A DNA stretch of 64,000 nucleotides from Klebsormidium nitens (GCA_000708835.1 DF237045.1:124001-188000); one strand, 5' to 3'; positions 27,461-47,850 are shown, counted from the first letter of the stretch. Translations and numbers: made by a program. Notes: generated by a model not told the origin, from the letters alone.

Positions 27461-27872
27461 ACCACAGCCCGTAACCACTGCCAGACTCGTGACTCCGATG
27501 ACTTCAGGTGTTTGAGTGTGCTTTACACCTATTTGGCGGGGCGGAGACACTAATAAAAGGAGAATGCTTTGATGCTTTTGCGCTAGTGCCAGCTCCAGGC
27601 TGAGCTCTTTCGAGTCTTTGCTGTGGTTGTCAAGTTTGAACAGGTGCCGTACCTAGATGCGCAGCAAAGGCGCACAGACAGCCTGCCTCACGGCTTCGAT
27701 GTTGCCGCCAAGTATTCCCATCTTCACCACTCGGCATCTGCATCTGAGCTCTACACGCCTCCTCCCACTTTTCTTTCCTTGAGCTTAAATTCCACAAAGA
27801 CTGAGCTTAAACACCACTTAGAGTAACAGCCAATTTATTTGAGCAGGACCTTTACACGGAACGTTCGCAGAA

Positions 27873-30800
27873 ATGAAGTTTGGCAGCCAATTCCAGTGGT
27901 TCCTCCAATCGCAGATTAGCGGGGAGTACCGTGCACACTGTCTTCAGTACAAATCATTGAAGAAGCAGCTCTCTCCGTGCCGAAGGCGCGACCCTTCCGC
28001 TCCCCCTCCCCATGGTTCTCCATCTGTGTGGGACTCCTACAGGCCCGTGCGCGCTCATTGCGATAGCTGTGACGTTCATTTCTGGTCCAATGTTGGTAAA
28101 GAAGTCAAGGATATCAGTGCATTCTTCACAAAACGAGCGGCGTTTCTACTCCAAGAGCATGGCGTTTCGCCGGTGTATGACGCGCAGCACCGGTGGTTTG
28201 CTTGCTTTTTGGGGGATGGGTGCAGGGGTCATGCGCATGAGCAGGTTGTGGATGCTGAGCTGGCGGGGGAGGCACGTCAGCTCATTCAGTTCGCTAAGGC
28301 CAACACAATGGCGCTCAGGAAAATATTGAAGAAGTACGATAAGCTTCACCGAACAGGTGCGTATTTATGGGACTTCTGGGATATGTGCCTGGCTTCCAAT
28401 GAACAAGTGTTGCAGGTTAGTGCACCATATGATGCAACCCTTACTTTTCTCTCCTGCATTCGGCAGGTCTCTGAAGTCAAGTGTTTGCATTCACCTTGCG
28501 TTGGCCTCCTCGTTGATGAAGCAATCATCTGAACTCAAAAAGGACTGCTCTTCCGAAAACACCAGCGCATCTGGCCCTCTCTGCCCTTTTAAGCCGTTGA
28601 ATTAGGTGGTGCACGTGCTCATCTGCTTATTCTGCACTGCCCCGGCCCTCCAAAGTCAGCTTCCTTGTCAGAGTTCCACTCTGTTGATTCTACAAACAGA
28701 TGAGGAGCATATTGCTCATGGTCCTGGCCACACTGTCAACTGGTGTACAAAAAGGGAACGACGCTCCCAGTGAAATTTGCCAGGAAGCAGTCTTCATGCG
28801 CCGTAACCTTCTAGGCTTCAAGGGAATGGTCCGCAGATACTGCAGCGTTTCCCATGATCAACACGGAGATCATACGTTGGTATCTTGTATTCTCCTTCAT
28901 CTTCTTCACACCTCGGCAAGGCATTGATCTGCTTGATCTGCATCAGCATCTGAAGCACTCTGTCCCCTTTACCCTGGCAGGAGCCGGCAAGGAGTTTATG
29001 CAGCGGTTGTTGCGCAAGGAGCACGGCAACAGCTTCTTCACGCAGCGCTTCCTTTTACATGAGCTCACGGCGCTACACTCCAGTCTCGGCGAGGAGAAGA
29101 CAAGTGATGCCGCTATTGGCCGGGAGCAGAGGCACAAGTGCGCTGAGCTCTTACAGGCGGTACGTCTCTCGTTGACAGATGCGGGTACGGAGGCGAGGTT
29201 GCCAGGGCCATATGCGCTGGACTTGCATTGCAGCGTGTGCCTGGTGAGGCTTCACGCTGCATAGTTCCCCTTTCTGCGCTGATTGCGTGTGTGCACCAGT
29301 AGTACCATCTGGAAATCGAATGGTCAGGGGCCTCTGTAGCTTGGTGTCGCATGGTTTTCCCCTAGTCAGGAGGTTATGTGTTCCAATCTCCCCATTTGGA
29401 TGGAGTCGGTTATCTTAGTCAAGTAGGAGTGCCTCATGGGAAACCCTTGTGCTGATTATGAAGAACCCAGTCTGACATGGAAACGTTCTGGCTTTTTGGA
29501 AGCCCTGTTCTCGTTTTGCCCCTCCGCATCTGGCAAGGCCTGTCGTAGGATGCCATTGTTGTGAAGGGTGATCTCTGAACCGGAATAAACACTGCGATAA
29601 GACTTTTCAGCGCTTGGAGTTCCGACTCTGGATTCTGCTTGGGAATTGCGTTTATACTGAGGTCAGTTCGCCGCAATCAACTCATCGTACACGTGGATCA
29701 GTTTCAGAAGGCGAGGCAATCGTTTTGTTTACCTCCTGCAGTACTCTCGAGACCTCTGCAATTACATTATCGAAGACAGGATTGGCCCCTCCTTAATACG
29801 TCGAAAAGCTTCAATCCAACCACATGCGATGTCCATTGCTGACTCCGCATTCCTGCTCTTGGTGCAGGAGGTCTTCGTGGATCCAATGGGGCTCAAGTGC
29901 GGGCACGTGTTCTGCAAGTCATGCGCATGTCGAGTAGCCAGAATCCACCCCCTGAACCCCAAGGGTCTGAAGGTGGCTCTGAAAACCGCACGCTGCGCGA
30001 TATGCCGCCAGGTGAAAAGACCAGGGCTTCAGAACTTTAGTTCCATGCAACAGAACCTTAGTGCAGATGCTCCTTCGAGTTTTCGCAGAAGCACGAGAAA
30101 ACCTGGGGTGCACAAGATTTGAGGTTTCCGGCGATCTCAAGTCGCTCAGCAGAATCATGATTTATATTTCGGTTTGCATAGCGAGCACTCTTGGGAGTGC
30201 TGTGTTGAGGATGGTTATCATTAAAAGAGACAAGGCCTGCCAAGCATCACAAAGGCTGCAATTGATGCATCTCTTACTCTTTGTCCGTCAACGGAAGGCT
30301 TTTGATTTCGCAGCTCAACCCCCCGCAAGACTCACATACTAACATTCTGATTTGTCCGACCGATTCACAACTTGGTACAGCTGTACGGCAAACGTTGACA
30401 TAGCCCCAAATGCTTATCAGGCTCTTGTGTTGCAGGCTGACGTGTACCAGAAGGCCGTTCCGCTCCCTGAGGTTGGAGAGCTCGTGAAGAAGAGGTCAGT
30501 CACATTATTCGCGTCTGCGGGTCTCTGGCTGTTTGATGTGCTCTCTTACACTAATGCAACGAGGCTACATCCGTCTGCAAATTCGCAATAAGTAAAGGGC
30601 TAAACAGTGAAGGTTGTCAGTTTGCAGTGTCTATGGTCGTAAATGAGTCCAAAAATGAAGTCCTTATCCACGTTCATTCCCTGTCGACTAGGGTCTGCCT
30701 AGGTCCGCGACTGCAGAAAAGCTGGTAAAGATGCACAATGTCTTCGCACAGCTTCTGGTGGTAATGTATTTTTGTGCATTTCAGGTTTCCAAAGGAGTGG

Positions 30801-32485: not shown

Positions 32486-35400
32486 TCAAGTCTCCTGGAA
32501 CTCGAAGACCTGCACCACGGTCACCCCTTCCGTTCCGTTGCACTCCGCCAGGAACGGAAGGAGCCGCCAGATCCGGACGGCCAGAATGACGTGCTCCTCC
32601 GCATCTTCCTTCTTTGGGGAGTGTACGTCCGGATAAGTGAACGAAAAGACGAGCTCGCAGCCGTCTTGGCGCGCGGCCCACGCGCGCGCAGCGGGCGACG
32701 CGACGCGCAGCTCGACTTGACACGTGGCGTCGTACAGGCAGCTGATGGCCAGGAGGTGGATGCGAGGGCTGCCAAGAGACGATTCAATAGGGGTTTGGCA
32801 GCTGTTTTGTGGATCAGCGCTGTTTAAAGGATGCGCGGCGAAGGCCTGCCGAAAAGAAGTAATTTGGAGAAGCTCCGAAGAACTGATCTTGCTGACTTGA
32901 GTATTTCTAGTTTCGAATTCGTTTTGCGAGGACTGAGCGGAGTTTGGAGGCATTCAAGCGGCAAAAAGTCGGACATCAATCTGCTTGAACAAGAATGGTC
33001 GAAAAAGCACTATAAGCACTTCGCGGAAACCCGGAGTGAAGTATTCAGCCCACGTGCACTCAATCAAACTGGCAAGTCGTACACGGAAGCACAAGAAGAC
33101 CCCTCCAAAAATGCAATGAGCAAACAATCCTGTGGCCAAAGTAATCGTTCTTCTGGCGAAACATGCGGTAGAGTTTCGACGCGGAACGAGAGCCAGTTCC
33201 TTGGCAAAATTCAAGCTTTTTTCCGCACCAATCAAAGCGTTCTTTGTTGAACATCACGAGCTACCTGCGAGTCAAAAATGGAGTGACGACACCCCCCACC
33301 CCCAAACTCACTCTGTCATGGATGAGAGCTCCTTGAGAATCTCGGTGAAGGGCACGTGCTTCGGGACGCGCATCACGAGCAGCGGCACCTTCGCGGCCGC
33401 CGAAACTCCCAAACCCTCCAGCCTTTGCGCGAGCGCGCCCGGGATGCTCTCCCAGGGGACGTCCAGAACGTGACACGTGGCGGACGGGTGGAGGCCCGCG
33501 AGCGTCTCGTCCAAAGGCGCGCGGGCGGCGCTCGCGCGTGCTAGCGCACCGCTTCGGAACTGCCCGCTTGGTTCCAACCGGTCACTCTCGGCTTGCGAAT
33601 GGGCGTCACTGAAACGCCGCCCGTCTATCCTCAGCTGGTTATCCTCCAATTGAAGTTGGGCGGATCCCGCCGGAGGTGGAATAGTCCGGTCGAGCACGAT
33701 TTCCCAGTGGCTTCCGTTGTCGAGCTGCGCGGTTGAAGCCGACCGGTCGATAGCGGCGTCGCTTTCGCTTTCTAGTGACGTGACGCTGACGTCACTCTGT
33801 TCGCTAAACTGGGCGAACAGCAGGAGGTCCTCGTAATCCTCCGGGGTCGCCTCGCCGAGGCCGAGACGCAAGGGGAGCGCAAGCAACCACATCCGCACGG
33901 ATCAGAGTGACGTCAGCGTCACGTCAGCCGCAGGAGAGCAGATTGTCATGCGTTTGCAGCGGATATCTGTCTGGCCTGGTGGCCCGAACGGGTTTGTGGA
34001 TGTCATGGTTACCGGTGAAAAGAAGACAGGTTTGTAATATTGCCTCAGACAAGTAAAACCTACGAATCTCAACCAAATCCAGGGCTCATGTCCGTAGCCT
34101 GTAAACGAACTGTCCTCGAAGCAAGCGACTGAGCAGAGGAGGCGAGTCACATCCAAGATAACCCAATTGAACGTTTGGACGCACAATCTGGAAAACATTG
34201 TGGCCCTAAGCCCAGTTGAGACCAGGAAAAGTTGCAAGACAGGATACTCTCTTTAACCGTCCCCATTCAAGCCCAATCTGTGAACGAGAGCAAAAGGAAG
34301 AAACGGTCTCATGTTGACAAGCAGGCACCAGTGGAACTGAGGACATAAAAACGAAGGTTGTCCCGTTTACCTGTCCGAACACGAACGTCAGGACCGCCCC
34401 GATGACGACCGCCATGTGGAAGCCCCGGTTCACGAGCACTCCGTGCGCGACGCCGTGCGCGCGCGCGGCGGCCGCGGCCTCGGCCGCGCACACGCGCCAG
34501 TAGAGCGCCACGTGGCGCATGAAGGGGAAGCGGAACCAGGCGGTGTGGTCCAGCGAAGCGGCGAACGATTTGGGCACGTGGACGAGCATCCACTCCGGGA
34601 GGCGGAAGAAGTTGAACGCGTGCGAGCCGCGGATTAGTCTCCGTTCGTACGCCAGAAGCCGTTCGTTTATCGCCGCGTCTAGTTGTCCGTATTCACCCAG
34701 GGCGCCCCCGGCCCACAGGTCCCGGTGTGAAAAGGCGCCTCTGGGTCGGACGTCCGCGGCCGCGGAGGCGACAAGCGAGAAGCGCTTATGCGGTGCCACG
34801 TGGCCGAGAAGCGCTTCTCCGCGCCCCGCCCCGAGCGGCTTCATGAAGCAGAACATGACGTCATCCGTGGGGTCCTTGGGGTCGTGTGCGCGCACCATGA
34901 GGTCGACGAAGCCGGCCGCGCGCGCGAGCGCACGCCAGGCGGCGAGCGGCCGGAACGCGCGCACTTCGGACGCTTCCTCGGACGCGGGGACGCCGGTGGC
35001 CGCGTTGAAGATGCTGTGGGCCAAATCGAGGAGAGGAACTAGATCGGGGGTCGCGTCGTGCTCCCTGCACAGACAAAAGAAAGCCCAATTCACGATCAGT
35101 GCTTGTCAAATCTTGACAGAGTTTGTTAGTTATAGTGGGGCCTGTCATGGGCGCGATTTGATGGTCCTTGTCTTAGGAGATACTAATTTGGCAGGCTTTT
35201 TTGTTCGTTTATAAGTACTGGAAGCAGATTCAAAAGAAAGAACTCGTCCAAATGTTGTAGATTTCGGAACGGCGCATTGGTAATCAGCGTAATCAACCTG
35301 ATAAGGCGCTGTCTTCGACTTTCACAAGATAGAGAGCTGGCTTCGAGATCCATACTTTTGATGCACAAGCATCTCATCCGGATAAGATTTGTTCGACCAA

Positions 35401-38400
35401 GCGTCACTTTGGTGCCACATGATATAACTAATGAGAGAAACTGCGAAGAAATTAAGAAAGGAACGGACAATACACGAAGTTTCGTTACTTGATTTCATCA
35501 TTCGTTTCAGTCAAGAGAAAAGTCCTACTAGAACATGATGGCTGCAGTACGAAGGGTCACAAAACACCGGTCCGAAAGAACCGGATCTCGACGACCTTGA
35601 GGCGGCAACCCCGTTTCGTGTCGTTTGCTAGCTAGGAGAATTTGCAGTAATATAAACAACGAGGCTAAAGAAAGCCGGCAGGAATGAATAGACGGACCCT
35701 TTTAAGCCTGATAAACAAGACGAAGATTGAATCGGCTGAAAGTTGCGGAGATGATTGGTAAGCTTCTATCCATCCAGCGTCCGAACCCCGTTTCTCACCT
35801 GATGATGAACAAACCGCCCGGCGCGAGAACCCTCCGGACGTCCGCCAGAAAGTCTCCAAGTCGTTCCTGGGGCAAATGGTGCAGCCCCATCATGACCGTT
35901 ACCAGGTCCACGCTGCCCGGCGGTAACGGTAGCTCCGGACACGTTTGATAGTCATACGCCATGCGCTCGCCCACCGGCCACGGGCGTCCGCGCTCCAGGG
36001 CGTCCGCGGGGAAGCGCGCGCGGTCGTGCGCGACGCACGCGCGGCCGCGCATGCCGAGCGCGCGCCGGAGGCCGACGACGTGGCGGCCGGCGTCGCCCAG
36101 GGTTAGCAGGGTTTGGAGGCGGCCGCCGAAGCCGAGGAGGGAGACGCACGTGGCCATCTGAAAGAGAAGAAAGCGAAGTCGATGAGGAATCCGCAATTCT
36201 TGCTAATTCTTCAACGTACTACTTTCCGGAGAAGTATCGTTTGTCCGTCCTTTTCGTTGATCCCTTCGCCCTCCCCTTTGTCATTGGTCTCAACGCTTCA
36301 AGCACTGAGAAGACGTCTTTCGGGCAACCGGGAAGAGTCCATTCTACGTAGCGCTGGCCAAAATTAGTTTGGGCGATTCGAATTAGTTTGGGCGAATCGA
36401 ACTGTCGCTAACGACAAACAGATTTGCTTCCTCCGGTTGCCTCTCTCCGTCGAAGGTGCAAAGCTAAGATACTCCCTCGACGCACTCTCAACAACGTAGT
36501 CTACGCCCTTGCGTAACAACTCTGGCATGTCAATGCCAAGAGGGCTCCTTTCCCACATGAGACCCTTCTGTCATGATTCTGAAGAGCTTTGAAGTGACAA
36601 TCGTACTCAATTGAAGTCTGGAAGGTTAAAGAAAAAAGCGACCGCACCGAGGATGGAGTATCGATTGATAAGGCACCTCCGGCACGCGTCAGCGAGATTG
36701 GTGCGCATAGCCGATGCTTCGTTTTGGTGATTGTCACCGCGGATAAAACCGGACGCCCAAAATTGGCGCCAAAGCCGTCCGAGAAGAATTACTCCTGCTT
36801 CACACTATCAACACAATTGACGCATTCGGGCAGCTTTGTGAAGTGTGAGGCGAAATACTCAAAAACACTGTCATACAAGCGCATGTCTAGCAAAAGAGAA
36901 CGGATACTACAAAGCCCAGTTAAAGCGAAGGAACAAAGAAGCAAGTACCTGCTCCACGAGGTCGGCCTTTTGCAGGATCAGTTGCTTCAGCGTCAGCAGC
37001 TGCGACCCAAACTTGTGCATCGGATGCCGCTCGTCTAGGATCCGCTGCAAGTCCGCGAAGACCTAGACGGAACCGGAATCAGACACGTGTCAGAGTAGCC
37101 GCCCGACAAGCTTACAAGTGCGTCTCTAGAAGAGTGAGGTCGTCAACTATAGCTTCTGACTTCATGAAGAGAATCGATGTGATCGGGAAATCAAGACATT
37201 TTTCTAGCATGACTATGAGTAGAAACCGGTCGTTTCAGTACATGGGTACGTTCAAGCAAAAGAATCTTGGACGGAGCAGATATAGAACATATCAGAACGC
37301 GGCTTTCCATCATGAAAGCTCTGTAGAACAGCGGGTCTTGCTTACTGTGGAAAGCTATGTCCTTCTTACCTGGCTGTCGTCCTTGTCGTGCGGACCCATA
37401 GCCGCTTGGCACACGTACGAATACATCGCGTCCGGGCTCTCCACGTGGAACACGTGGCGCAGGAACAGCTGCAGGCGCGCGCGCAGCGCGTCGCTCGCGA
37501 GCACCGCCCGGTACGAGTTCGTCCGGTGCTCGGACACCGTTTCGATCGGGACCGAGGGATCCCCCCGGGCGCAACTAGGGGCGGCAGAAAAGTCGCCGGA
37601 AGAAGGCGCGGATAAAGATGGGCAGCTCCGAGTCTGCGTCGAGCTATCGGTGTTACCTAAGTGATTGGTGACACCGACTATGTTGCTGACGTCAATACAA
37701 TTGGGCAGGACGGAAGTTGGTGACGTGGCCTGGCGGGCGACGCTGACGTACTCCTTGCCGTATGTGGTGAACCTGTAAAGACCGGAAGAGTCAATTTTGG
37801 CTCTCTTGTGTTCAGGTTGATTTTTGCTGACCAAGGAACAATCTCAGAGCACTCGAAGAACAGCAAACGTATGCCAGTAACAAGGAAACAATACACGTGT
37901 CTTAGGGCAAATCTTAGAAATTCAGTTGGGCTTGAGTCCGATGGAGCCGACGGAGTCCGAGGGGATGATATCAGTCTAAAAGCTCGTTCATCTTGTCCAC
38001 GGACTGCCGCAAGAAACGCAGGGATACCATACTGAGTACGTTGCAAGGAAAGAACTTCTCACTTTAAGGCTTCAGGCACAGAAAGAATCCCGCAGAGCAT
38101 GAGTACTTAAAGTTGTTGCAACAGCCCATGTGCTCAAAGACTTGTGCACAATACGAAAGAGCCCATAAAGATTTGTATTAAAAGGATCTCAACAGCCGAC
38201 TCAAACGAGGGGCAAAGGTATCCACTCAACGACCGGGTCACCCCCAGCTCCCTTGATAGGTGACGGGACGAAGTACTGGTTTTGATACAACTTAACTTCT
38301 TCCATAGAAAGGAAAACGAAGGCAGTCGAGGGAAGCCTTACCAGACGTTGGAGAAGATGTTGTCCGGATCGTACTTGGCCTTGAGCCGGAAGAACTCGCC

Positions 38401-41400
38401 GATGTTGGGGTACGCTGTCCGCAGCTCCTCGGGCGAGTAGTGCGGACGGTACGGCAGGTAGAAGGTGCCTGAACCCGAAATTGGGCTTAGGGTTCCGTCT
38501 TTTTTGACAAAGCGATGAACGTTTCCAAACTTTTTCTCTCGGTTCCAACAAAATCAGGTGCCACACCTTACGAACTCCAGAGGTCGTCCGTCGTGAGAGA
38601 CTTTCCAGCTCCCAAAGGGAAGACGAGAGAACCCTTTTCGAGCACCCCCAACTCGCACTTACGCAACTCAGTAGGTGCGAGATTGACGGAATTCGACGTT
38701 ATATGACACTCTCCGCCTTTTGTGGTGGCTATCGAGCACTCCGTTGAAAACAACATCTTGGGTGGAGGTGAAGGGGCCCGAGCTTTTGACAAGCATCGTA
38801 ACCCACGGATGGCTAGAATAACTAGGCACAAAGAAAAAGAAAGCGAAGAATAGACAAGTGTGTCGTGACCGGATACCCACCTCCGAGGCGCAGCGCAGTC
38901 TATCAATGTGAACAAAAGCCTTTTTGCTTGGATCTTGCGTCATCCCTCCGACGCTCGAGTGAGATCTCAGCACCACACTCTTCTAGGTCCTCAAACGAGG
39001 AAGCTTCAAAGAAGACAGTAGCCTTTTGGGAAGGAATGGCTAGAAGCGAGACGAGCCCTGTCCGGGAACCCACCCTCGAGGCGCAGCGTGGCGTCCACGA
39101 GTGCCCGGTGGACTGCCCCGAGCGCCGCGTCTCCCTCCGGCGTGCACGGGAGGCGGAAGTAGAGCACGAACGCGAAGCTGGGGCAGCGGGCGTAGCGCAG
39201 GAATGTGGTGGTATCGGGTTGGAGATACCTGGGGAGATAGAAGGAGTCAGATTAGGAGCCCACAAAGAGCACTCATGCATCAAAGAATAGAGCACGAAGG
39301 CGAAGCTGGGGAACCGGGTGTAGAAGGAACGTCGTGATATCGGGTTGGAGATACCTGCCGGAGATATAAGATTGCCGCAGGAGCCAAGAAAGAGCACTCA
39401 TTGGAAAGTTTAGAGCACGAAAGCGAAGCTGGGGAACCGGGCGTGGCGCACAAACGTCGTGGTATTGGCTTGAGGATACCTGCCGGAGATATAAGATTAA
39501 CGCAGGAGCCAAGAAAGAGCACTCATTGGAAAGTGTAGAGCACAAAAGCGAAGCTGGGGCACCGAGCGTAACGCAGGAATGTGGTGGTCTTTGATTGGAC
39601 TTGCCTAAAGGGCCAAGATGGGGGATGCGATGTGTCTTTCTTCGTTGTTTTTGTTGTTTGTCTTGTATCTGAGCCGCTGCGCACATTGTGGGCCGCGATC
39701 ATGCGGTAGAAGAGATGAGCTTTAGAGATTGAGGACTACAAACGCCAAGGAAGAAGTTGGTGCATAGAATGAGCAAATTTGGAGGGATGCTAAGGGGGCG
39801 GCGGGACTTTGACTGGAGACATCATGGGAGCAGAGCCCCGGAACTGAGAAAGAGACTTTCAGGGCGCGAACTTCGAACCGTGAAAGATTCCATCATCTTC
39901 GAATGAAGCGCTGGGAAAGTTCTCAAAGGTACGACTAAGGCATCTCGCAAAAGGAGGACCTATTTTGAACGTTGAGTGTCTCCTCTTCTCCTACTCAGAT
40001 AATTTTTGACAAGCTTTGATGCAAATAACCTCTGGTCAACAAGCCTTCCGACCTACCTGTTGCACAACGAGAGAGTTTGTAATACTCACAAATCAGAAAA
40101 TGTCGAAAACGAACGTCTTCTGTGTACTTTCGCATGAAGCGAGATGCTTGCCTGATGGTGATGTTGAGCAGCTTGATATCGCAGTGTGCGTCGCTCAGAA
40201 TGCCCGTCGCGGCCTCCATCCAGTCGGCGAATCGATGGTGCGGGACGAAGTATTCCTGGAAGGCAGGTTTGCAACTCTCAGATGCTGAACGGCTGACCCG
40301 ATTTGCTACAGATACCGTTAAATTGACTTGAGAAGAGGCGAATAAGAGGCGCGCAGAATTGGAGCAGTACTAAGGTGAGTCAAAGGGCTGAAACCATCTC
40401 CGTCATGTTGCTCGTTGCTTGCAGCGTCAATTTCATTGAGAGCCCCAGGACGCCGAGTAATTCCCAATGACGAGACTCCTGCCAAGCCAAAGCTGTTCAG
40501 TTTATCAAACGAAGTTACGACAACCCCTCTTATGTAAGTACCCGCAGCAATAATGGTAAAAGCTGTCCACGAAAGCAAAGGAAATTTTTCCTTCCTGGAC
40601 GATTGCGGTTACCAGCATGGTTACGAGTACGGTTCCGAGCATGGTTACGAGCATGACTACGAGCACGGATACGAGCATATTTACGAGCACGGTTACGAGA
40701 ACGAATACGACCATGGTTACGAGCATTGTTAGAACTTAACCTTTCCACTTTACCTGAAGAACGTGCGTCTGGTTGAGCCGCACGAGGGGCGCCACGAGGT
40801 GCGCGAGCGGGTACGCGCTCTCGTACAGGATGCAGTTCCGGTCGACCTCCCGCTGCCAGTCGAGCGGAACGCGGAGCAGCCGCTCCAAGGAGAAGCGGAG
40901 CTGCGGGGGAAGCAGGCACGTGGGTCGTTGACGTCAGCTGACGTCGTTTCATGGACGCGGGTCTCCGCTGCGACCGCAGCACAGGAACGACAGTACATCT
41001 ATCGAGGATAACACCCCACGACCTTAACCTCTCCTTACCAAGATCGAAAACCCACATTCATCACGTAACAGACGGTGACAAACCCACTTTACCGTGACTA
41101 GACACCGAGAGCACCAGACTCTTAGTTTTGAGAAACAAAGGAGAGTCCGAACCTTTCATCCCAGGAGCCAAAAACCCGAAAGCTCACGACTCCTGCGTGA
41201 TGCCCACCTTTTGGACGATCCTGAGCGGCAAGAGCCACTTGTAGATAAGAGCGCCGGCAGGGCTCATCTGGCGGGGCCCCTCCGGAAGGTCACTAACCGT
41301 CGGCTGGCCCTGCGAAACCAAAACCTTAACCTTAAGTACAGCTTTTCCGTCGAGCTCGCCACCCTATGATCTTTCAGAAATCAGGTTATGGTGCGCAGTC

Positions 41401-44400
41401 CGATGCCTTGCCGTCGTCCAATTGAATGATTCGAGATGATGACTCATGCTCCGACAATCTGGGAAATGATGGCAAGTCTACGCAAACAGCTGTATCCAAC
41501 TTCTGAAACACTGAAACCCGGAAAGTCTACAGGTTCTTTGAATGCAACTCGTGAACTTTGCATTTCGTTTGGCTGCTAGAGGCCCGGCAGCAGCGGCGAG
41601 ACATTGGAATCGGCAACCGAGGAAGCACTCAAAGAAATTTGACTAACTCAAGTTTAGGACATCTAAGCACAGCGTAGTTCCACGTGCTGACGTCAAGAGC
41701 GATCGATCGATCAAGCAGCCTGCTCGAGCAGGCTGCTTGCACAGATGCTCTTGGATCCAGAGAAAGTTCGACACTCGTGAGGCAGGACCAGAAAGAGAAA
41801 CACCCCGCTGGAGACTCATGATAGCTTACGTGGGAATTTTGCACGGTCAAGTAAGCCGTTCTGCCCCAAGAACTCTACAAAACTGTGCCAGATGAAGTGC
41901 AGACACCTCAGCGTTTACGCCTCATCATTCTTGGAGCCTGAACAAAGCGCGGGAACGCTGGACGAGAATGCTTTACCTTGTTGGAGCGCCTCGAGGTGTA
42001 GAGCGAGATCCGGTCGAACTTGTGCCACGTCAGCTCGACGCGCGCCAGTTTCATCTCCACCGCCGGGTCCGTCAGCAGAGGCCTGCAAAATGCAGCAAAT
42101 TTTCAGCAGAAAATCTACGGAAACCTACTTGACATAAAGTTTAGGAGTTCGAACTCCTCTCGTCGCCGCTCAACAAAATCTTCGCAGTCCGCTGGGCGAC
42201 CACCTGGCGGAATCACTCAATCTATGTCGCCGTTTCGTGCCCCAATCCGTGCTTCCTTAAAAACTGCTGCCAAAGTGAGGGAATTTTGCCTCACAGACAT
42301 TGAAGAAGGTTCAAGGGGTCAATCGTGCAAGGTACACAACACGAGGGATGCTGACTTCACAGGTTATACTGAAATACTGGCAAGCAAAATGCCCCTGACG
42401 TCATGCTCACGTGTACGCGTCGACGAACCGGTGCCGATCCAACGTGAGAGACTCCAGCGCGGTCTTCACGTTCGGCACTACGCGCAGCGTCACCTCCGTC
42501 AGCACGCCAAACAGACCGTAGCCGCCGATCACCTGCGGAAATGGACGGTCCCGATGCTTCTGGATTGACATTGACGGTCGTTGTGTGAGTATAAGGGAGA
42601 AAGGATTGAACGACGGCATGGAGTTGAGAGGAAAAGGATGGAGAAAGCTGGACGTTTCGGACGCTTTTAAGGACTGCTCTTTGGCCTGAAAGGGTGTATT
42701 CTGCTCGGAAGGCCAGATGAAAATGTGCGGGGATGTGAGAATGTTGGCAAAAGGCCAGCGTCTTCAAGGTGAGGAAAGTGGAGGGGAAACCAGTACGTAG
42801 GCGGAATTCGCGCAAACAAGTGTGCCGATGCTTCGCAATGAGTCAGATAAGCGGGCACCTGTTTGCACTTAGAGCAACTGGATTTCCGTGAACGCCTGCG
42901 CACTTTGTCGAACGAGACGTTGCTTGTAGAGTCAGCTTCTGCCAGAAAGAACTGATTAGCGCTTGGTGAAGCGCTCTCCTTCATCATGGCCACGAAAACC
43001 CTGACCAATCCAGCGACGCTGGCAAAGACTCCCCTAAATCCTTCCTGAGAGGGGAGGACCCTCCTGACAAAAAGCTCACCGGAGACAAAGGTCGCTCAGT
43101 CGCTTCTTAAGTGTCCCTTTTTCAAGTGTCCCTCACCAGCGACCCGAGTCAACTAGGTTATCGGATAACCAGTGTCGTTAAAAGGTCAAACCCGGTGCAA
43201 AAAAGTGCGACTTACCAGGAGAGCTTGGCCCAGTTGTGAGGAAAAGGGGTCGGCGTTTTGGTCATAACACACGCTTTTCAAGGAAAAAGGCTTGGCGATT
43301 ACGTCCCCGTTGCGACGTGCTAGAGAAAGAGGTCGGCGTCTAGGTGCCGGTCACTGCTGATCAGCAAGGGAAAAGAGTCGGCAAATGCTTCCCGGTTGCG
43401 GCTTACTAGGAGAATGTGGCTAGGATTTTTCGTCCGGGTTGCATTTTGGTAGGAAGAAGAACCCCGGTTTATTGTCCCGGTTGCGACTTACCAGGGAGAA
43501 CAGCTCGGCGTTCTCGTCCCGACAACAATTGACCACGTGTCCGTTTGCGTCGACGAGCCGCAGCCGCAGAACGGCCTCGTGCATGGCGCAGTCCGCCGTG
43601 ATGCCGTGCGCATTCACACTGATGCTCCCACCCACGGAGAAGGAGCAGTAGGACTGCGAGGTGAACGGGCTCGTCAGGCACAAGCCGCCGAGAAGATGAT
43701 CAATGAAACTCGTGTGTTAATGGAAATCAAAATGTAGTGAGACGAGCGATCCGATGACATTTGGCAATAAAGTTTTGATATATACAAGAGGCCGATGCTC
43801 CATATGTGTACACATCAAGTTTTCGGACTCCAAATTATCCTCACCACGCAGCAAACCAAACCCTCCATTGTAAGGTATGCTGACTTACATCACAGGAGTG
43901 AGGGACTTGGGGTGTTCTCAATCTAACCAGATCAACCAACGAAGCAACACCCACAAGTTACCTGCATGATCATTGGCGACACTCCAAAGTCGTTGAGGTA
44001 CTTGATAAGGTCGCCCCAAGTCGCGCCCGGGCCAACTGACACCGTCTGCGAGGCCGGGTCGTAGCGCATGCTGTTGAGGTACTTGGTGTCAATCAGGAAG
44101 CCGCCCGGCGCCAAGATGTGACCGCCCATCGTGTGGGACTGGCCCCGCATGGAAACCTGGGGACGTTGCGTTTCTGTGTTAGGTGCTAAACTGGAAAGGG
44201 ATGTATCTTACTGATCGGCGAAAAAAGAATTGCCAGAGAATGGTGGTCGACACAAGCGCGTGAACGTGCAAAGTTGGTGGAAAGAAGAAGCAGATCTGTC
44301 CATCTTCTCAAGATCAAATTGAACCTGCACTTTGGTAAGAAACTGCGGTGGAAAACGGCTGAATCAATGGAACACTGAGCAGAATAAAAGAAAGGTGCTT

Positions 44401-45704
44401 TCGGTCCAAACAACGTCCTTGGGACTAAAGCAAACTTCTTTCAGAGCAGCTCTTTAGATGCCTCCCGACTCTGAAATCACTCAAACGAACAACATTTGGT
44501 TCTCTACCTATGAATTGGCGAAGCTGAGCCAGCCATAGAACCGAATGGCAATAGGGACAGATCTGAAACCTAAGTAGAGCCGAACAAGTACAGATGAAAG
44601 AGTGTCATGAAACTTAAGTCTCTAGTTGAACAGTCATCCGCCACAAAACCGCACAGGTTGGATATCACATTCAGCTCATAAGCTCCACAGCAGGGCTCAA
44701 ATCAACACCACTTATCCCTAGACCCTTTGCTTGAACAGTGGCTGTCAAGTCCGAGTTAGTGTCATGTCAGATTCAGATCAACTGCCATCTCGTTTGACGG
44801 CTCTCACCTGACAGCCCTTGAGCTGGGCGGCCCGCACCACCGCTCGCACGTCCTCCTCCGACGCCACCATGAACACCCGCTCCACCTCACACTCGTTCAT
44901 CTGAGTGACGTCATCCACCAAGACCCCGTCCCCTCCCCCTCCCTTCGACGCCTTCCGCCGAAGTCTTTTTGCCGTCAAGGTAACTAAAGTGATTGTAGCC
45001 AGCCCTAGCGTCGGTTTCGAGTAGAATATTGCTTTCAAGGGAGGGAGGTGTGTGATCAAGTGCCCGGTAGAGTACCCCAGGCGCAGAATCCAGTGAAGCC
45101 CGATGCCCAGAACCACAAACCGGGGGATCAGAATCTTTGCCCCAAGCGCCCAGCGAAAGAAGCGCCCAACAGGCCTGGCAACTAGGTTGAGGGATAGAGA
45201 CCCCAGCTTAGAGATGGATTTCCGGATAGTGGGCTGTTGCGTTCCTAGGAACGTGCACAAAACGAGTCCTGAGGAGAGGATTGGCTGAGCAGCCCACAAT
45301 TGAGATGCGTCCAAAAGGAGGCTATTCGCACTGCTAAGGAATGGCGTCAAGGGGTTGAAGGCGGATAGTACATTCGGTGCGATGCCAATTGCCTTTGGAA
45401 GGAAGGGAGAGATTTGGCGGAACAGGTGGGAACCGATTGGGGCAGCTGCCAAAAGCAAAGGGATCGCTGGCAATTGCACCGGCGGGCGCCTCTTTCTAAA
45501 CAACCGCACAAACAGCTGGCGGCCAATGTGGAAAAGCTGGAGAAACAGTCCGCTGATGCTGCGCCAGGCAGGGGGAAGGATCCTCGTCGCCACAAAGCGC
45601 CCCAGTCTAGTTAGCCCGATGAGAGCGAGTGCCAGCGCTAAGGCGGCAATCACTGGGTGGTATGAACAAAACCGCTGCGGTGCGCCAGTGAGAATGCGCT
45701 CCAT
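32486..45704 (-). CDS. ~1,500-aa multidomain protein: hydrophobic N-terminus + VAO/PCMH-type FAD-linked oxidase + class I SAM-dependent methyltransferase-like domain + uncharacterised C-terminal domain
   Basis: 16 phase-consistent exons: 44808-45704, 43962-44156, 43492-43653, 42411-42532, 41977-42082, 41208-41309, 40754-40900, 40152-40255, 39074-39228, 38342-38468, 37370-37772, 36949-37062, 35799-36157, 34371-35064, 33312-~33892, 32486-32768. Oxidase motifs: SMRGQSHTMGGH, VSVGPGATW, SFSVGGSISVNAHG, ELFSLVIGGYGLFGV, LQEYFVP, LLNITIR, GTFYLPY, KYDPDNIFSN. MTase motifs: GSVDLVTVMMGLHHL...DVRRVLAPGGLFIIREHD. Start (45704 vs 46157) and the exon 15 acceptor are uncertain. Confidence 0.82.
33776..33926. 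repeat. Perfect 24-bp inverted repeat flanking the exon 15 acceptor region of the FAD fusion gene
   Basis: tgacgtgacgctgacgtcactctg (33776-33799) is the exact reverse complement of cagagtgacgtcagcgtcacgtca (33903-33926). Confidence 0.9.
38871..38910 (-). repeat. Degenerate intronic copy of the FAD-gene exon 9 donor junction
   Basis: Minus strand ...gactgcgctgcgcctcggag|gtgggtatcc versus functional ...gccacgctgcgcctcgagg|gtgggttccc at 39074. Confidence 0.7.
39159..39600 (-). repeat. Four tandem ~125-bp units of acceptor + exon 9 start of the FAD gene; only the most 3' unit is functional
   Basis: agagcac anchors at 39161, 39289, 39412, 39537; gatacctg (acceptor, plus-strand view) at 39225, 39350, 39475. 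Confidence 0.9.
40611..40730. repeat. Degenerate 12-bp minisatellite (ACGAGCATGGTT) x~10 in an intron
   Basis: Direct reading: accagcatggtt acgagtacggtt ccgagcatggtt acgagcatgact acgagcacggat ... Confidence 0.85.
43200..43510 (-). repeat. Degenerate tandem copies (~85-105 bp period) of the FAD-gene exon 3 donor junction
   Basis: Functional cccggttgcgacttaccagggagaa (43476-43500) is echoed at ~43391 (cccggttgcggcttactaggagaa), ~43306 and ~43207 (gcgacttaccaggagag). Confidence 0.65.
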
Positions 45705-47850
45705 TGTGGCAGAGGTGACTTGGCGGTAGCGGGAGAGAGGGGCTCCAATGATGCCAGCTGGCAGTCTTTCCAGAGCTGAACAAATACGCAGCGGTTGTGC
45801 TTTTGAGCTGTGGCGAGCTGGGATTGCAGGAGACAGAGGCTGATTGACTGTTCTTCCGAATGAACGTCTGGAGCGAGAGAAGGGGTGCGAGAGTGAAGAG
45901 CTATAAGAAACAAAATGCACGCCCCTTCTTGGGTCTGACGTTTTGCCTGGTGCATTGGCTGATGTTCTCTGCAGGGCAGATCTGGGTGGGGTGCGAGGAG
46001 TTGGCCTGCGCTTGAGCTTGGCCCACACGCTTTTCAAGTCCCTCTCGCATTCTGAGACGTTGCTTCTCCGCAGCGCTTGTTCTGAACAAGACAAGAACCC
46101 GGCCATCGTCTGGTTCCCAGTAAGACTCAGAGGCAGGAGCAGGCTGAGGTCCTCCATGCTGATGTCGCTTGAGGGAGTTCTCTTGCAGGATACGCTCCTC
46201 CTCACCAGCTAAAGATGACGGTGAGCGCGAACTGGCAAGAAAATCTCCTTCAAGTTCAAATGATGACGTCCACTGTAGTCGCTTCGTTGAAAGTGACAGC
46301 CGCGGTGGCTTCTCATTGGCAGCTAGGGAACTGGGGGCGTCATCGAAGCACTCCCTCTCCGGCCCGCGCGAGGTGGCAGGCAGGGTTACGACCGTCGCGC
46401 GTTTTCTGTCCTGCAGTGGAGTCAGGCGGATCGAGTCCTGCCGTCCGAGCGCCGTCTTCTGCGCGAGCTTACGTCACCAAATTTGGACCGCGCGTATTCA
46501 AACCTCAAACCGCAAACCAAGGCGCGACACCTCGGTATCGGCCGGCCGGGCGGGCGCGGGCTACGTGTACGGCCCGCGGGCGGGCGCGCGTCCAAAGGGT
46601 CGAGTCCGAGGCAGACGTCAGTAACAAATCCGCCGTTTGAACGATACAACTGACCATCAAGCGTCAGTGAGAATCGGCCCGATTAGTGGGAAACGTTTTT
46701 GGAAGCAACAAAGCAACCTTGAGAAGCTCGCCTTGGCCGTGATTTCGTCGCGGGCGCTTCTTTGAACCGTGAAAGATGGCGCGCTTCAAACACAGCAGCA
46801 TTCAGATGGGACTATACCCAACTCGTTCGAACGTCGGGCGCACAAAGATGTTCAGATGATCGGATTCCCCGACGTTTCATGTACGTTTTAAATCTGTTCT
46901 GCAATGAGTTCTGTGATTTATGTAATCGTGGTTCAGCTCCTTTTCTATCATTTCATTCAAGACTCCATTTAACGAAGACATCGGCGCAGGACAGCGATAA
47001 AGGTACTCTGATCTTTACCCTGGCAAAGCCTTCCAGTTGTGTAGTACTCGGAGACCAGTGGACATCTACATAGGTTGAACTCATCGAATGAATATGGATT
47101 TCTGAAGACTTCGAACCGCTATCTGCGGACTTGAAATGCAAAATGCTGCCCATATGCCGCCGAACGTTTTGTAACAGAAGACGGATCGCAGCACATTGAA
47201 CGTAATAGCAAGGGCTGTGCAGCAATTGCATCCGTTTCTGCCTATTCGGCAACCCCCACAACGCTTAAGCGAATATTGTTCGGGAGAAAAATCCTGCAGT
47301 GACTTTGAACACTGTCAACGTTACGAACGTCTCGAAATTCCGCTAGATATGATAGTTACATTACAGAATTTGTCCGTAACTACTGGCCGCGTGCCTTCGC
47401 TTGATTGAACCATTCAGGGTACCTCCAGAGCACTAAATGTACATCCCGCGCAAGCAAGAGTCTGTATTGTACACTTCACGGTAAAGATTGTACACTACGG
47501 TAAAGATTCGTCATGTCTTCCAAAAATCGCAAGCAGCGTGCTGTATCTAACAACGGCGCAAAGCAGTACGCCGTTTCCTTGTACCGTCCTCCCACTTCGC
47601 ATGCAAGAAGCTACTGACTGCGCGGAAAGAACGACGTGCTGATCTATTAGAGGTGAATTTCAGCTTGCCAAATCCTTGTACCGTCCCTCAATACTCAAAT
47701 TGCATGCAAGAAGTAATACGTATTAGTAATAACTGTCCAAAAAGAATGTCCATAAACTCGATCCCCGCCCACCCACCAAATCGGCTTTCCCAGCGATCCG
47801 TTTTCGCCGAACCAAAGTCAACCTTCCCACGCCCACTTTCCTCAATCCGT

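What the first reader, a model, noticed from the sequence alone, without database searches (positions are those of the whole stretch)
32486..45704. Giant spliced fusion of FAD-linked oxidase + methyltransferase + unknown domain: a bacterial-type module in one eukaryotic gene
Seen: 16 exons splice in phase into ~1,500 aa: a hydrophobic N-terminus; a complete VAO/PCMH-type oxidase (GQSHT with the candidate covalent-FAD His, VGGSISVNAHG, QEYFVP, GTFYLPY, KYDPxNIF); a class I MTase-like domain; and a further ~450-aa domain. Established: such oxidases (gulonolactone oxidase, DprE1, berberine-bridge relatives) and SAM methyltransferases are typical tailoring enzymes. Inference from recollection only: oxidase-MTase fusions with an adjacent PEW-motif hypothetical gene occur in bacteria, so this may be a horizontally acquired operon fused and intronised, acting as a membrane-anchored multi-step enzyme for an unknown metabolite. 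I know of no land-plant protein with this architecture. The MTase motif I is degenerate (LTLGDAGRH), so SAM binding is uncertain.
Basis: partly seen in the sequence, partly recalled or inferred. Interest (0 to 1): 0.85.

Follow-up and report, generated by a model that had tools for sequence, protein, structure and literature searches.

The report
Flavin oxidase–methyltransferase fusion gene in alga
This alga transcribes one long 16-exon gene joining a flavin oxidase, a methyl-adding enzyme and a membrane tail; the same three parts form an operon in bacteria and one protein in many protists and giant viruses, its function is unknown, and this genome's copy has lost a splice site.

Summary
A minus-strand gene (about 46224 to 32486) has 16 exons that splice in phase. 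It encodes an N-terminal hydrophobic region, a VAO/PCMH oxidase of the ALO/DprE1 type, a class I methyltransferase domain, and a "PEW" tail. The tail is a helical bundle, a hydrophobic helix and two ferredoxin-like domains.

Spliced RNA contigs from four studies carry oxidase, methyltransferase and tail exons on one molecule.

- Bacteria do carry the module. Of 80 loci, 40 have an oxidase-methyltransferase ORF with a PEW ORF directly downstream, 12 have three separate ORFs, and 3 (Chlamydiota-type) are fully fused.
- The full fusion is not special to this alga. It occurs in green algae, alveolates, diatoms, Discoba, Amoebozoa, bdelloid rotifers and giant viruses.
- The window's protein sits inside the eukaryotic clade. 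AU tests reject a clade with bacteria (p 0.015) or with giant viruses (p 0.002).

No function is known for any member.

New here: the acceptor of intron 14 reads GG in this genome, where a related genome has AG. RNA contigs mostly retain the intron, which brings a premature stop. One contig uses a cryptic acceptor that deletes 56 codons.

The parts
32486..46157 (-). Coding span of the gene, from the first AUG at 46157 to the stop at 32488-32486. The mRNA probably starts near 46200-46224 and runs at least 276 nt past 32486.
   Evidence: The 16-exon model is in frame. Family profile score is 1058 bits. The 5' end is inferred from RNA contig lengths, and no AUG lies upstream of 46157 in that span.
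44808..46157 (-). Exon 1. It encodes a Ser/Arg/Pro-rich N-terminus (about 150 aa), then several hydrophobic helices (aa about 164-400), then the start of the FAD domain.
   Evidence: Hydropathy peaks at aa 164-186 and 336-360. Profile positions 12-73 map to 44987-44802. Relatives in the same clade also carry multi-helix N-termini.
38342..44156 (-). Exons 2-10 encode the VAO/PCMH flavin oxidase (FAD_binding_4 plus an ALO/DprE1-like cap). The exons are 44156-43962, 43653-43492, 42532-42411, 42082-41977, 41309-41208, 40900-40754, 40255-40152, 39228-39074 and 38468-38342.
   Evidence: Pfam and NCBIfam hits. Splice choice was guided by homologues. The junction 39074|38468 is confirmed by an RNA loose end. 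Exon-only conservation in the relative L085.
44133..44135 (-). His codon of the G-Q-S-H-T motif, the candidate site of covalent 8-alpha-histidyl FAD.
   Evidence: It aligns with the G-H-S histidine of cytokinin dehydrogenase 7. That this histidine carries the flavin in cytokinin dehydrogenases is from my own knowledge. It is His in 91% of eukaryotic and viral members and Phe in 85% of bacterial ones.
39229..40151 (-). Intron 8, a GC-AG intron (donor CAG|GCAAGC).
   Evidence: Best homologue-guided junction. Profile positions of exons 8 and 9 abut at about 384. No RNA was laid here.
36949..37772 (-). Exons 11 (37772-37370) and 12 (37062-36949). They encode a variable linker plus the conserved helical N-terminal part of the methyltransferase module.
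   Evidence: RNA joints at 38342|37772, 37370|37062 and 36949|36157. Profile positions 513-612. The same helices are present in the bacterial 556-aa protein model.
34900..36157 (-). Exon 13 (36157-35799) and the first part of exon 14 encode the class I SAM-methyltransferase core. Motif I is L-G-D-A-G-R-H; other motifs are V-A-H-D, G-L-H-H and R-E-H-D.
   Evidence: Methyltransf_11 E 1.9e-9. RNA joint 35799|35064. The homologue model matches solved methyltransferases such as PsoF, Coq5, MitM and NodS at E 1e-9 to 1e-7.
34371..34899 (-). The rest of exon 14 encodes the PEW helical module (P-E-W at 34598-34590) and the first half of the conserved hydrophobic helix.
   Evidence: Profile positions about 800-915. 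E and W are invariant in 66 sequences. The model is a long-helix bundle.
33725..34370 (-). Intron 14 as removed through a cryptic acceptor. It is retained in most RNA contigs, and the reading frame then stops at 34208-34206.
   Evidence: Contigs of X5 and X7 run unbroken across 33312-35063, and X1 and X12 also cover the intron. Only X12 shows the joint 34371|33724. The retained form gives 1,434 aa.
33893..33894 (-). Lost natural acceptor of intron 14. This genome reads GG before ATGTGG; the related genome reads AG.
   Evidence: Window sequence against L085 7940-7960. An L085-like join at 33892 extends the family match to profile position 947 and adds 15 bits. The peptide from 33892 is conserved in L085.
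33312..33724 (-). Exon 15 as spliced in RNA; the inferred ancestral start is 33892. It encodes a variable insert, then the start of the C-terminal ferredoxin-like pair (V-P-K-H-V-P-F-T-E-I-L).
   Evidence: RNA joints 34371|33724 and 33312|32768. 65% protein identity to L085 with in-frame gaps. Profile positions 961 onward.
32486..32768 (-). Exon 16 and the stop codon. It encodes the end of the tandem ferredoxin-like domain.
   Evidence: Profile positions 992-1070. The C-terminal domain match has i-Evalue 8e-11 in the spliced model. 90% nucleotide identity to L085, ending exactly at the stop.
39160..39588 (.). 125-bp tandem repeat (3.4 copies) that copies the acceptor and 5' part of exon 9 into intron 8 as pseudo-exons.
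   Evidence: Tandem Repeats Finder. Weak extra profile hits at 39606-39535 and 39481-39413.

Best explanation
This is an expressed nuclear gene of a streptophyte alga. Other notes of this scan name the alga as Klebsormidium nitens; I did not verify that.

The gene encodes a membrane-anchored enzyme of three modules:
1. A flavin oxidase of the ALO/GULO/DprE1 branch of the VAO/PCMH superfamily, probably with histidine-linked FAD.
2. A class I SAM-dependent methyltransferase of the small-molecule/lipid type.
3. A 'PEW' module: a helical bundle, one hydrophobic helix, and two ferredoxin-like (ACT-like) domains.

It belongs to an uncharacterised family. In bacteria the same three parts are an operon, usually an oxidase-methyltransferase gene followed by a PEW gene. 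In Chlamydiota-type bacteria, many protists, bdelloid rotifers and giant viruses they form one polypeptide.

Inferred mechanism: a two-step tailoring of a membrane-bound or lipid-linked substrate. The flavin domain dehydrogenates an alcohol (less likely an amine), and the methyltransferase methylates the same molecule. The PEW tail would hold the enzyme at the membrane and bind a ligand or partner.

Shown: the architecture, the transcription as one mRNA, family membership and the family's distribution. Inferred: the chemistry.

In this genome the natural acceptor of intron 14 is mutated from AG to GG. Most mRNA therefore keeps the intron and would give a protein cut inside the hydrophobic helix, without the ferredoxin-like tail. 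A minor form uses a cryptic acceptor and lacks 56 residues.
For: Domains:
- Pfam and NCBIfam hits on the exons.
- Collinear family-profile hits covering positions 12-1070, found only in this gene.
- The spliced model scores 1058 bits.

One transcript:
- Spliced contigs in four runs from four studies join oxidase, linker, methyltransferase and tail exons. Examples are X7 record 12 (32486-38469) and X1 record 4 (4,047 nt).

Family and distribution:
- 352 representative proteins at E<=1e-3.
- Named full-length homologues come from Cymbomonas, Perkinsus, dinoflagellates, Naegleria, dictyostelids, Bodo, Balamuthia, a diatom, bdelloid rotifers, Tupanvirus and Edafosvirus.

Bacterial operon:
- Of 80 loci, 40 have an OX-MT ORF with a PEW ORF directly downstream, 12 have three ORFs, and 3 are full fusions.
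- One further locus has an MT-PEW gene next to the oxidase gene, inside a polysaccharide cluster.

Placement:
- Bacteria are split from eukaryotes plus viruses with 100% SH-aLRT.
- AU tests.

Folds:
- The model of the homologue has pLDDT 92. It shows a methyltransferase fold, a helical bundle and a ferredoxin-like pair.
- The PEW fold recurs in bacterial hypothetical proteins and in FAD-oxidoreductase fusions.

Oxidase subtype:
- Best NCBIfam matches are sugar-1,4-lactone oxidase, DprE1 and bact_FAD_ox, all below their cut-offs.
- The motif His aligns with the G-H-S histidine of cytokinin dehydrogenase.

Membrane association:
- A strongly hydrophobic segment occurs in the PEW module of nearly all members, and N-terminal helices in many.

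Splice defect.
Against: - No member of the family has a tested activity, and I found no paper on it.
- The substrate is unknown.
- Bacterial neighbours are not conserved beyond the module itself. They point in two directions: a polysaccharide cluster in one locus, and a lysophospholipid-type MFS-acyltransferase and an alpha/beta hydrolase in subsets.
- Methyltransferase motif I is non-canonical, so SAM binding is unproven.
- The PEW tail has no specific solved relative (Z at most 8.3, generic).
- Logan contigs cannot quantify isoforms. 'Mostly retained' rests on unbroken contigs, not on read counts.
- The upstream exons 1-9 are homology-guided, not read-confirmed.
- The tree is unrooted, and many rows have skewed composition.
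Confidence: 0.6

Rival explanations
1. A bacterial oxidase-methyltransferase-PEW operon was transferred directly into this algal lineage, then fused and acquired introns there.
For: Bacteria do carry the operon. The family is patchy in eukaryotes and absent from named land-plant hits.
Against: The full fusion already exists across many eukaryotes and giant viruses. The window's protein lies inside the eukaryotic clade. A clade with bacteria is rejected (lnL difference 56.7, p-AU 0.015). A clade with Cymbomonas is not rejected (p-AU 0.50).
Confidence: 0.07
2. BfaA/BfaB-like chemistry. The methyltransferase adds a methylene to a double bond of a membrane lipid, and the flavoenzyme works as a reductase, giving a methyl-branched lipid.
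For: BfaA (an 'FAD-binding oxidoreductase') and BfaB (a SAM methyltransferase) form an overlapping operon, sometimes with a third ORF bfaC of unknown function. An artificial BfaA-B fusion works better than the separate genes (PMC5660069; PMC7791843). Some bacterial loci have lipid-type neighbours. The family is membrane-associated.
Against: BfaB is a Cfa-type methyltransferase, and no CMAS/Cfa Pfam family matches here. The oxidase groups with alcohol-oxidising ALO/DprE1/lactone oxidases. A histidine-linked flavin, as expected in the eukaryotic members, usually marks an oxidase rather than a reductase (general knowledge).
Confidence: 0.15
3. Only the oxidase is catalytic. The methyltransferase-like domain is a SAM or ligand sensor or a scaffold, and the ACT-like tail is regulatory.
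For: Motif I lacks the middle glycine in the whole family. The PEW fold is also found fused to FAD oxidoreductases in bacterial clusters where no methyltransferase Pfam family is listed. Tandem ferredoxin/ACT-like domains are commonly ligand-binding (one search matches to HisG and aspartate-kinase regulatory domains; general knowledge).
Against: The fold is a complete class I methyltransferase. The two motif-I glycines that are present are invariant, and the strand-2 Asp, G-L-H-H and R-x-H-D are strongly conserved from bacteria to eukaryotes. That pattern fits a working active site.
Confidence: 0.15
4. In this strain the gene is on its way to being a pseudogene. The acceptor loss makes the full-length protein rare or absent, so it has little or no function here.
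For: GG replaces AG at 33894-33893. The intron is retained in contigs of all four runs, with a stop at 34208-34206 and a further intron downstream of that stop.
Against: The gene is transcribed in all runs laid. All other exons are intact and conserved against the relative, up to the stop codon. A cryptic in-frame splice exists. A truncated oxidase-methyltransferase protein could still be active, because bacteria encode the tail separately.
Confidence: 0.2

Closest known systems
DprE1 (decaprenylphosphoryl-beta-D-ribose 2'-oxidase) and the sugar-1,4-lactone oxidases GULO/ALO/GLDH
   Same: Same branch of the VAO/PCMH superfamily: FAD_binding_4 plus an ALO-type cap. These enzymes are membrane-associated and dehydrogenate a secondary alcohol (general knowledge). 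The bacterial members of this family lack the flavinylation histidine, as DprE1 does (general knowledge).
   Different: Scores are far below every curated cut-off, for example DprE1 64-84 bits against a cut-off of 500. The C-terminal motif is Y-L-P-Y rather than the Lys-containing motifs of DprE1/GULO (from memory). No known member of those families is fused to a methyltransferase and a PEW tail.
Cytokinin dehydrogenase (CKX)
   Same: Best solved-structure relatives by sequence in the FAD domain (E 1e-17). The motif His aligns with the CKX G-H-S histidine, and the C-terminal Y-L-P-x-Y / D-P motif aligns weakly (second stretch, 2.2 bits).
   Different: Only about 160 residues align well. Pfam assigns an ALO cap, not the cytokinin-binding cap. 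CKX is a soluble secreted or vacuolar single-domain enzyme (general knowledge).
BfaA-BfaB (10-methyl fatty acid pathway of actinomycetes)
   Same: An FAD-binding oxidoreductase and a SAM methyltransferase encoded as an overlapping pair, with an optional third ORF. They act on membrane lipids and are more efficient when fused (PMC5660069, PMC7791843).
   Different: BfaB is a Cfa-type methyltransferase, and no such Pfam match exists here. I could not compare BfaA directly. There is no PEW module.
Small-molecule class I methyltransferases (Coq5/UbiE, PsoF, MitM, NodS, RebM)
   Same: Fold match of the homologue model at E 1e-9 to 1e-7. Methyltransf_11/25 hits. The weak best NCBIfam names are lipid or quinone methyltransferases.
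   Different: Motif I is G-x-x-G-R instead of G-x-G-x-G. Family-specific invariant residues include H-H, R-x-H, H-x-x-x-N and E-x-R-x-F. All curated cut-offs are missed.

Membership tests
VAO/PCMH flavoprotein superfamily, ALO/GULO/DprE1 branch | FAD_binding_4 (PCMH-type) domain | tested here: met
   PF01565 on two window exons (E 6e-9 and 5e-7). E 1e-21 to 1e-32 in full-length homologues.
VAO/PCMH flavoprotein superfamily, ALO/GULO/DprE1 branch | ALO-type substrate/cap domain (PF04030) | tested here: inconclusive
   Met in homologues (E 5e-6 to 2.5e-4). In the window only weak DprE1 and pln_FAD_oxido hits on the last oxidase exon (E 0.003-0.005). The spliced window protein could not be handed to Pfam.
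VAO/PCMH flavoprotein superfamily, ALO/GULO/DprE1 branch | Equivalog-level match to a characterised enzyme (GULO, ALO, GLDH, DprE1) | tested here: not met
   All NCBIfam scores are far below the curated cut-offs.
VAO/PCMH flavoprotein superfamily, ALO/GULO/DprE1 branch | Covalent histidyl-FAD | not testable with these tools
   The His of G-Q-S-H-T aligns with the CKX G-H-S histidine and is 91% conserved in eukaryotic members. Flavinylation itself needs protein chemistry.
Class I SAM-dependent methyltransferases | Rossmann-like seven-strand fold | tested here: met
   Shown for the family: model of P0071, pLDDT 92, with Foldseek matches to SAM/SAH-bound methyltransferases. The window exon matches Methyltransf_11 at E 1.9e-9.
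Class I SAM-dependent methyltransferases | Motif I G-x-G-x-G | tested here: not met
   The window has L-G-D-A-G-R. The family consensus is G-[DS]-x-G-R in both eukaryotes and bacteria.
Class I SAM-dependent methyltransferases | Acidic residue at the end of strand 2 (binds the ribose of SAM) | tested here: met
   Asp in V-A-H-D, conserved in 81-85% of members. The assignment is by alignment only.
Class I SAM-dependent methyltransferases | SAM binding and methyl transfer | not testable with these tools
   Needs recombinant protein.
BfaA/BfaB branched-fatty-acid system | Cfa-type (cyclopropane-fatty-acyl-phospholipid synthase) methyltransferase | tested here: not met
   No CMAS/Cfa family among the Pfam hits of the window exon or the homologues.
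BfaA/BfaB branched-fatty-acid system | FAD oxidoreductase and methyltransferase genetically coupled | tested here: met
   Fused here, and fused or adjacent in 75 of 80 bacterial loci.
Uncharacterised OX-MT-PEW family ('FAD-binding PCMH-type domain-containing protein' in databases) | Collinear oxidase, methyltransferase, PEW helices, hydrophobic helix and ferredoxin-like pair | tested here: met
   1058 bits over profile positions 12-915 and 961-1070. 43-44% identity to the closest full-length members.

The most novel reading that the evidence does not exclude
The oxidase-methyltransferase-PEW unit is an undescribed, ancient three-part membrane enzyme system. It makes a still unknown oxidised and methylated lipid or glycan. 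It fused once, in a Chlamydiota-like or early eukaryotic or viral host, and then spread among protists, rotifers and giant viruses. The alga's copy would be a natural splice-site hypomorph that separates the catalytic part from the tail.
Probability: 0.45. Interest if true: 0.65.

Novelty: new member of a known kind. Interest (0 to 1): 0.5.

Why it matters
The gene itself is one more member of a family already present, unnamed, in public databases. The family is what makes it worth attention. It is a conserved three-part module with no known product. It is an operon in Proteobacteria, Bacteroidota and Planctomycetota and a single protein in chlamydiae, many protist groups, bdelloid rotifers and giant viruses.

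Finding its substrate would assign a function to hundreds of proteins. It might also reveal a membrane lipid or glycan modification shared by bacteria, protists and giant viruses.

The bacterial operons give tractable systems for that work. The acceptor loss in this alga is a small natural experiment on whether the tail is needed.

Tried and rejected
- ESM Atlas feature search with exon 14 gave only weak methyltransferase-like leads (scores at most 0.84).
A 5-sequence alignment worked.
- Literature searches found no paper on this family: Pfam name pair, oxidase/methyltransferase/giant virus/Naegleria, UniProt-style name plus HGT.
- Neighbour clustering in 80 bacterial loci found no widely conserved partner beyond the module.
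- Foldseek and VIA-align on the PEW tail gave only generic helical-bundle and ferredoxin-like matches.
- The AU test on the 73-row mixture-model tree did not finish. I repeated it on 28 rows with LG+G4.
- Separate genes: rejected, because spliced contigs span the junctions.
- Recent giant-virus origin: rejected, because the gene has 15 introns and the AU test gives p 0.002.
- Contamination: rejected, because of spliceosomal introns and exon-only conservation in a related genome.
- I could not hand the spliced window protein to Pfam, the fold tools or the big searches, because it has no reference. Those analyses used single exons or homologues.

Full report
**1. What is in the sequence**

All coding signal of the finding lies on the minus strand. 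Pfam finds FAD_binding_4 in two exon-sized open stretches (44150-43932, E 6e-9; 43683-43420, E 5e-7). It finds Methyltransf_11/25 in 36196-35795 (E 2e-9). NCBIfam gives weak hits of the sugar-lactone-oxidase, DprE1 and GlcD kind on the oxidase exons, and UbiE-like hits on the methyltransferase exon.

I searched 1.84 billion representative proteins with the 299-aa open stretch 35105-34209 and found 352 relatives. Many are 1,000-1,800 aa long. A profile built from 29 of them was run against every stop-free segment of all six frames of the 64-kb window. Every hit with E<1 lay on the minus strand inside this gene. The hits are collinear and cover profile positions 12-1070 of 1070. The only hits out of series were two weak copies of exon 9 inside a tandem repeat. 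This is far beyond chance.

**2. Gene model**

I chose splice sites with homologue guidance. This gives 16 exons:
- 46157-44808
- 44156-43962
- 43653-43492
- 42532-42411
- 42082-41977
- 41309-41208
- 40900-40754
- 40255-40152
- 39228-39074
- 38468-38342
- 37772-37370
- 37062-36949
- 36157-35799
- 35064-34371
- 33724-33312
- 32768-32489, followed by the stop at 32488-32486

The joined sequence is in frame with a single terminal stop. Fourteen introns are GT-AG and one (40151-39229) is GC-AG with a good GC-donor context. The product is 1,611 aa from the AUG at 46157 and matches the family profile with 1058 bits.

**3. RNA evidence**

Public runs hold about half of the sampled words of 32486-38485, as expected for exon-only RNA. 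I laid four runs from four studies on exactly those 6,000 bases. All contigs are identical to the window. They show these introns removed:
- 38341-37773
- 37369-37063
- 36948-36158
- 35798-35065
- 33311-32769

A loose end at 38469 reads into the end of exon 9, which confirms 39074|38468. Single contigs carry oxidase, linker, methyltransferase and tail exons together. X7 record 12 spans 32486-38469. X1 record 4 is 4,047 nt long. The oxidase-methyltransferase fusion is therefore transcribed as one mRNA.

Three contigs extend 2,483-2,510 nt upstream of 38469. Subtracting the 1,093 nt of exons 2-9 places their ends at about 46197-46224. This is an inference, because I could not lay reads there. 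In that span the first AUG is 46157, in a good context, and an in-frame stop lies just upstream.

**4. A lost splice acceptor**

Contigs of X5 and X7 run unbroken from 33312 to 35063. X1 and X12 also cover that interval. Only X12 shows a joint, 34371|33724.

With the interval retained, the frame stops at 34208-34206, giving 1,434 aa.

A related genome (L085, a Logan contig) aligns to the window only in the exons, at 88-90% nucleotide identity. The exon-14 block ends at 34362, about the donor. The last block ends exactly at the stop codon. In L085 the intron ends ...ggtgcAG|ATGTGGCTG. This joins F-G-Q to M-W-L-L-A-L-P-L-R.

The window reads ...gtgcGG|ATGTGGTTG. No AG lies between about 33960 and 33853, and an in-frame stop sits at 33904-33902.

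The peptide from 33892 is conserved in L085. An L085-like join extends the family match from profile position 915 to 947 and adds 15 bits. That restores the second half of the family's hydrophobic helix.

I conclude that this genome has lost the natural acceptor of intron 14. The intron is mostly retained. A cryptic acceptor at 33724 gives an in-frame product lacking 56 residues. Contigs cannot give isoform ratios, so 'mostly' is an inference from the unbroken contigs.

**5. The three modules**

(a) Oxidase. Full-length homologues carry FAD_binding_4 plus the ALO cap. The best curated models are sugar-1,4-lactone oxidase, DprE1 and bact_FAD_ox, all far below their cut-offs. The closest solved relatives by sequence are cytokinin dehydrogenases. 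Their G-H-S histidine, which I know to be the covalent flavinylation site, aligns with the His of G-Q-S-H-T. That His is present in 91% of eukaryotic and viral members but is Phe in 85% of bacterial ones.

(b) Methyltransferase. An AlphaFold model of the 556-aa bacterial relative P0071 has pLDDT 92. It matches SAM/SAH-bound small-molecule methyltransferases at E 1e-9 to 1e-7. The 'degenerate' motif I (G-D-A-G-R) is the family norm. Its two glycines and the Asp ending strand 2 are conserved.

(c) PEW module. It has long helices with invariant E-W, then a strongly hydrophobic helix present in almost all members, then two ferredoxin-like domains. Solved structures give only generic matches: spectrin-like bundles, and HisG, EF-G and CutA-like ferredoxin folds, with Z at most 8.3. 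In the ESM Atlas the same fold occurs in bacterial hypothetical proteins and fused to FAD oxidoreductases.

In addition, the window's protein and its closest clade carry several N-terminal hydrophobic helices.

**6. Distribution and origin**

Named full-length homologues come from these organisms:
- the green alga Cymbomonas
- Perkinsus, dinoflagellates and Amoebophrya
- a diatom
- Naegleria and Willaertia
- Bodo, and a EukProt transcriptome entry labelled 'Hpha'
- dictyostelids and Balamuthia
- bdelloid rotifers
- Tupanvirus and Edafosvirus

No land plant appears among the named hits.

A scan of one genome per bacterial species found 126 loci, of which 80 were kept. Their arrangements:

| Arrangement | Loci |
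|---|---|
| OX-MT ORF with PEW ORF directly downstream | 40 |
| OX-MT ORF, no PEW ORF in the fetched flank (some contigs are short) | 17 |
| Three separate ORFs | 12 |
| OX-MT ORF with PEW ORF placed elsewhere | 3 |
| Fully fused (two Chlamydiota bins and one unclassified bin) | 3 |
| Incomplete | 5 |

The fully fused loci have bacterial neighbours. One further arrangement, an MT-PEW gene followed by the oxidase gene, lies in a polysaccharide and ABC-exporter cluster.

In a 73-row tree, bacteria form one side of a 100% branch. The window's protein sits unresolved inside a eukaryotic clade, apart from the two viral clades.

On a 28-row set:
- A clade of window plus bacteria is rejected (lnL difference 56.7, p-AU 0.015).
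- A clade with the giant-virus group is rejected (p-AU 0.002).
- A clade with Cymbomonas is not rejected (p-AU 0.50).

The gene is therefore not a lineage-specific bacterial import. Any bacterium-to-eukaryote transfer is old, or passed through other eukaryotes. Vertical descent within green algae is allowed but not shown.

The tree is unrooted. If the root lies among the split-gene bacteria, then the Chlamydiota and eukaryotic/viral fusions would share one fusion event. This is a speculation.

**7. How it most likely works**

Shown: the domain folds and the family's conserved residues, the predicted membrane segments (hydropathy only, no experiment), the coupling of the three parts from bacteria to eukaryotes, and the transcription as one mRNA.

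Inferred: a two-step tailoring of a membrane-bound or lipid-linked substrate. The flavin domain would dehydrogenate an alcohol (possibly an amine), as its ALO, DprE1 and CKX relatives do. The methyltransferase would modify the same molecule. The tail would anchor the enzyme and perhaps bind a ligand. I give this chemistry about 0.3-0.35. I give the identity and evolutionary statements about 0.9.

The main rival is BfaA/BfaB-like chemistry: methylenation of a lipid double bond followed by flavin-dependent reduction (PMC5660069, PMC7791843). The genetic coupling and an optional third ORF are the same. The methyltransferase type differs, with no Cfa-type match.

Bacterial neighbours are not decisive. 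They include a polysaccharide cluster in one case, and MFS-acyltransferase and alpha/beta-hydrolase genes in subsets.

**8. Verdict**

The gene is a new member of a widespread but uncharacterised family. Its architecture is not unique to this alga. I found no published function.

Interest is moderate. It rests on the family-level question and on the natural splice-site lesion, not on the gene's uniqueness.

Noticed in passing
window 39160-39588: A 125-bp tandem repeat (3.4 copies, 81% matches) copies the acceptor and first part of exon 9 into intron 8. The related genome L085 has its own separate duplications of the 3' part of exon 9 (L085 2017-2095 and 2425-2503).
   Followed up: partly
window 40607-40731: A 12/36-bp repeat (GGTTACGAGCAT, about 10 copies) lies inside intron 7. 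It reads as Gly-Tyr-Glu-His repeats on the plus strand and is probably non-coding.
   Followed up: no
window 32486-33727 versus 34371-38469: RNA contigs over the last two exons have higher mean depth than those over upstream exons (X12: 36.7 against 15-20; X1: 271 against 150). This could be 3' bias, or a shorter transcript starting inside retained intron 14 near the conserved ATG at 33892.
   Followed up: no
proteins P0005, P0009, P0014, P0021, P0035, P0043 and others: Many eukaryotic members (dinoflagellates, dictyostelids, Naegleria gruberi, diatoms, Bodo) carry an extra 450-600 aa between the methyltransferase and PEW modules. It has no Pfam match. These members form one well-supported clade in the tree.
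   Followed up: partly
L001 8001-11071: An alternative bacterial arrangement: an MT-PEW gene (556 aa) followed by a separate FAD_binding_4/ALO oxidase gene. It lies inside a surface-polysaccharide cluster with a UDP-sugar epimerase and dehydrogenase, two Asn-synthase-like genes, a GT4 glycosyltransferase and an ABC-2 exporter.
   Followed up: partly
L005, L006, L007: Fully fused three-module genes in Chlamydiota-type bins, with bacterial neighbours (ABC-3 permease, MatE). They branch apart from all other bacteria sampled, which suggests a possible link to the eukaryotic fusions.
   Followed up: partly
window 15837-17720, 23244-23714, 27843-30119: By eye from the translations only: a PLATZ-like zinc-finger gene, a branched-chain aminotransferase-like exon, and an SPX-domain gene followed by a RING-finger exon. 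All look like ordinary intron-containing nuclear genes.
   Followed up: no
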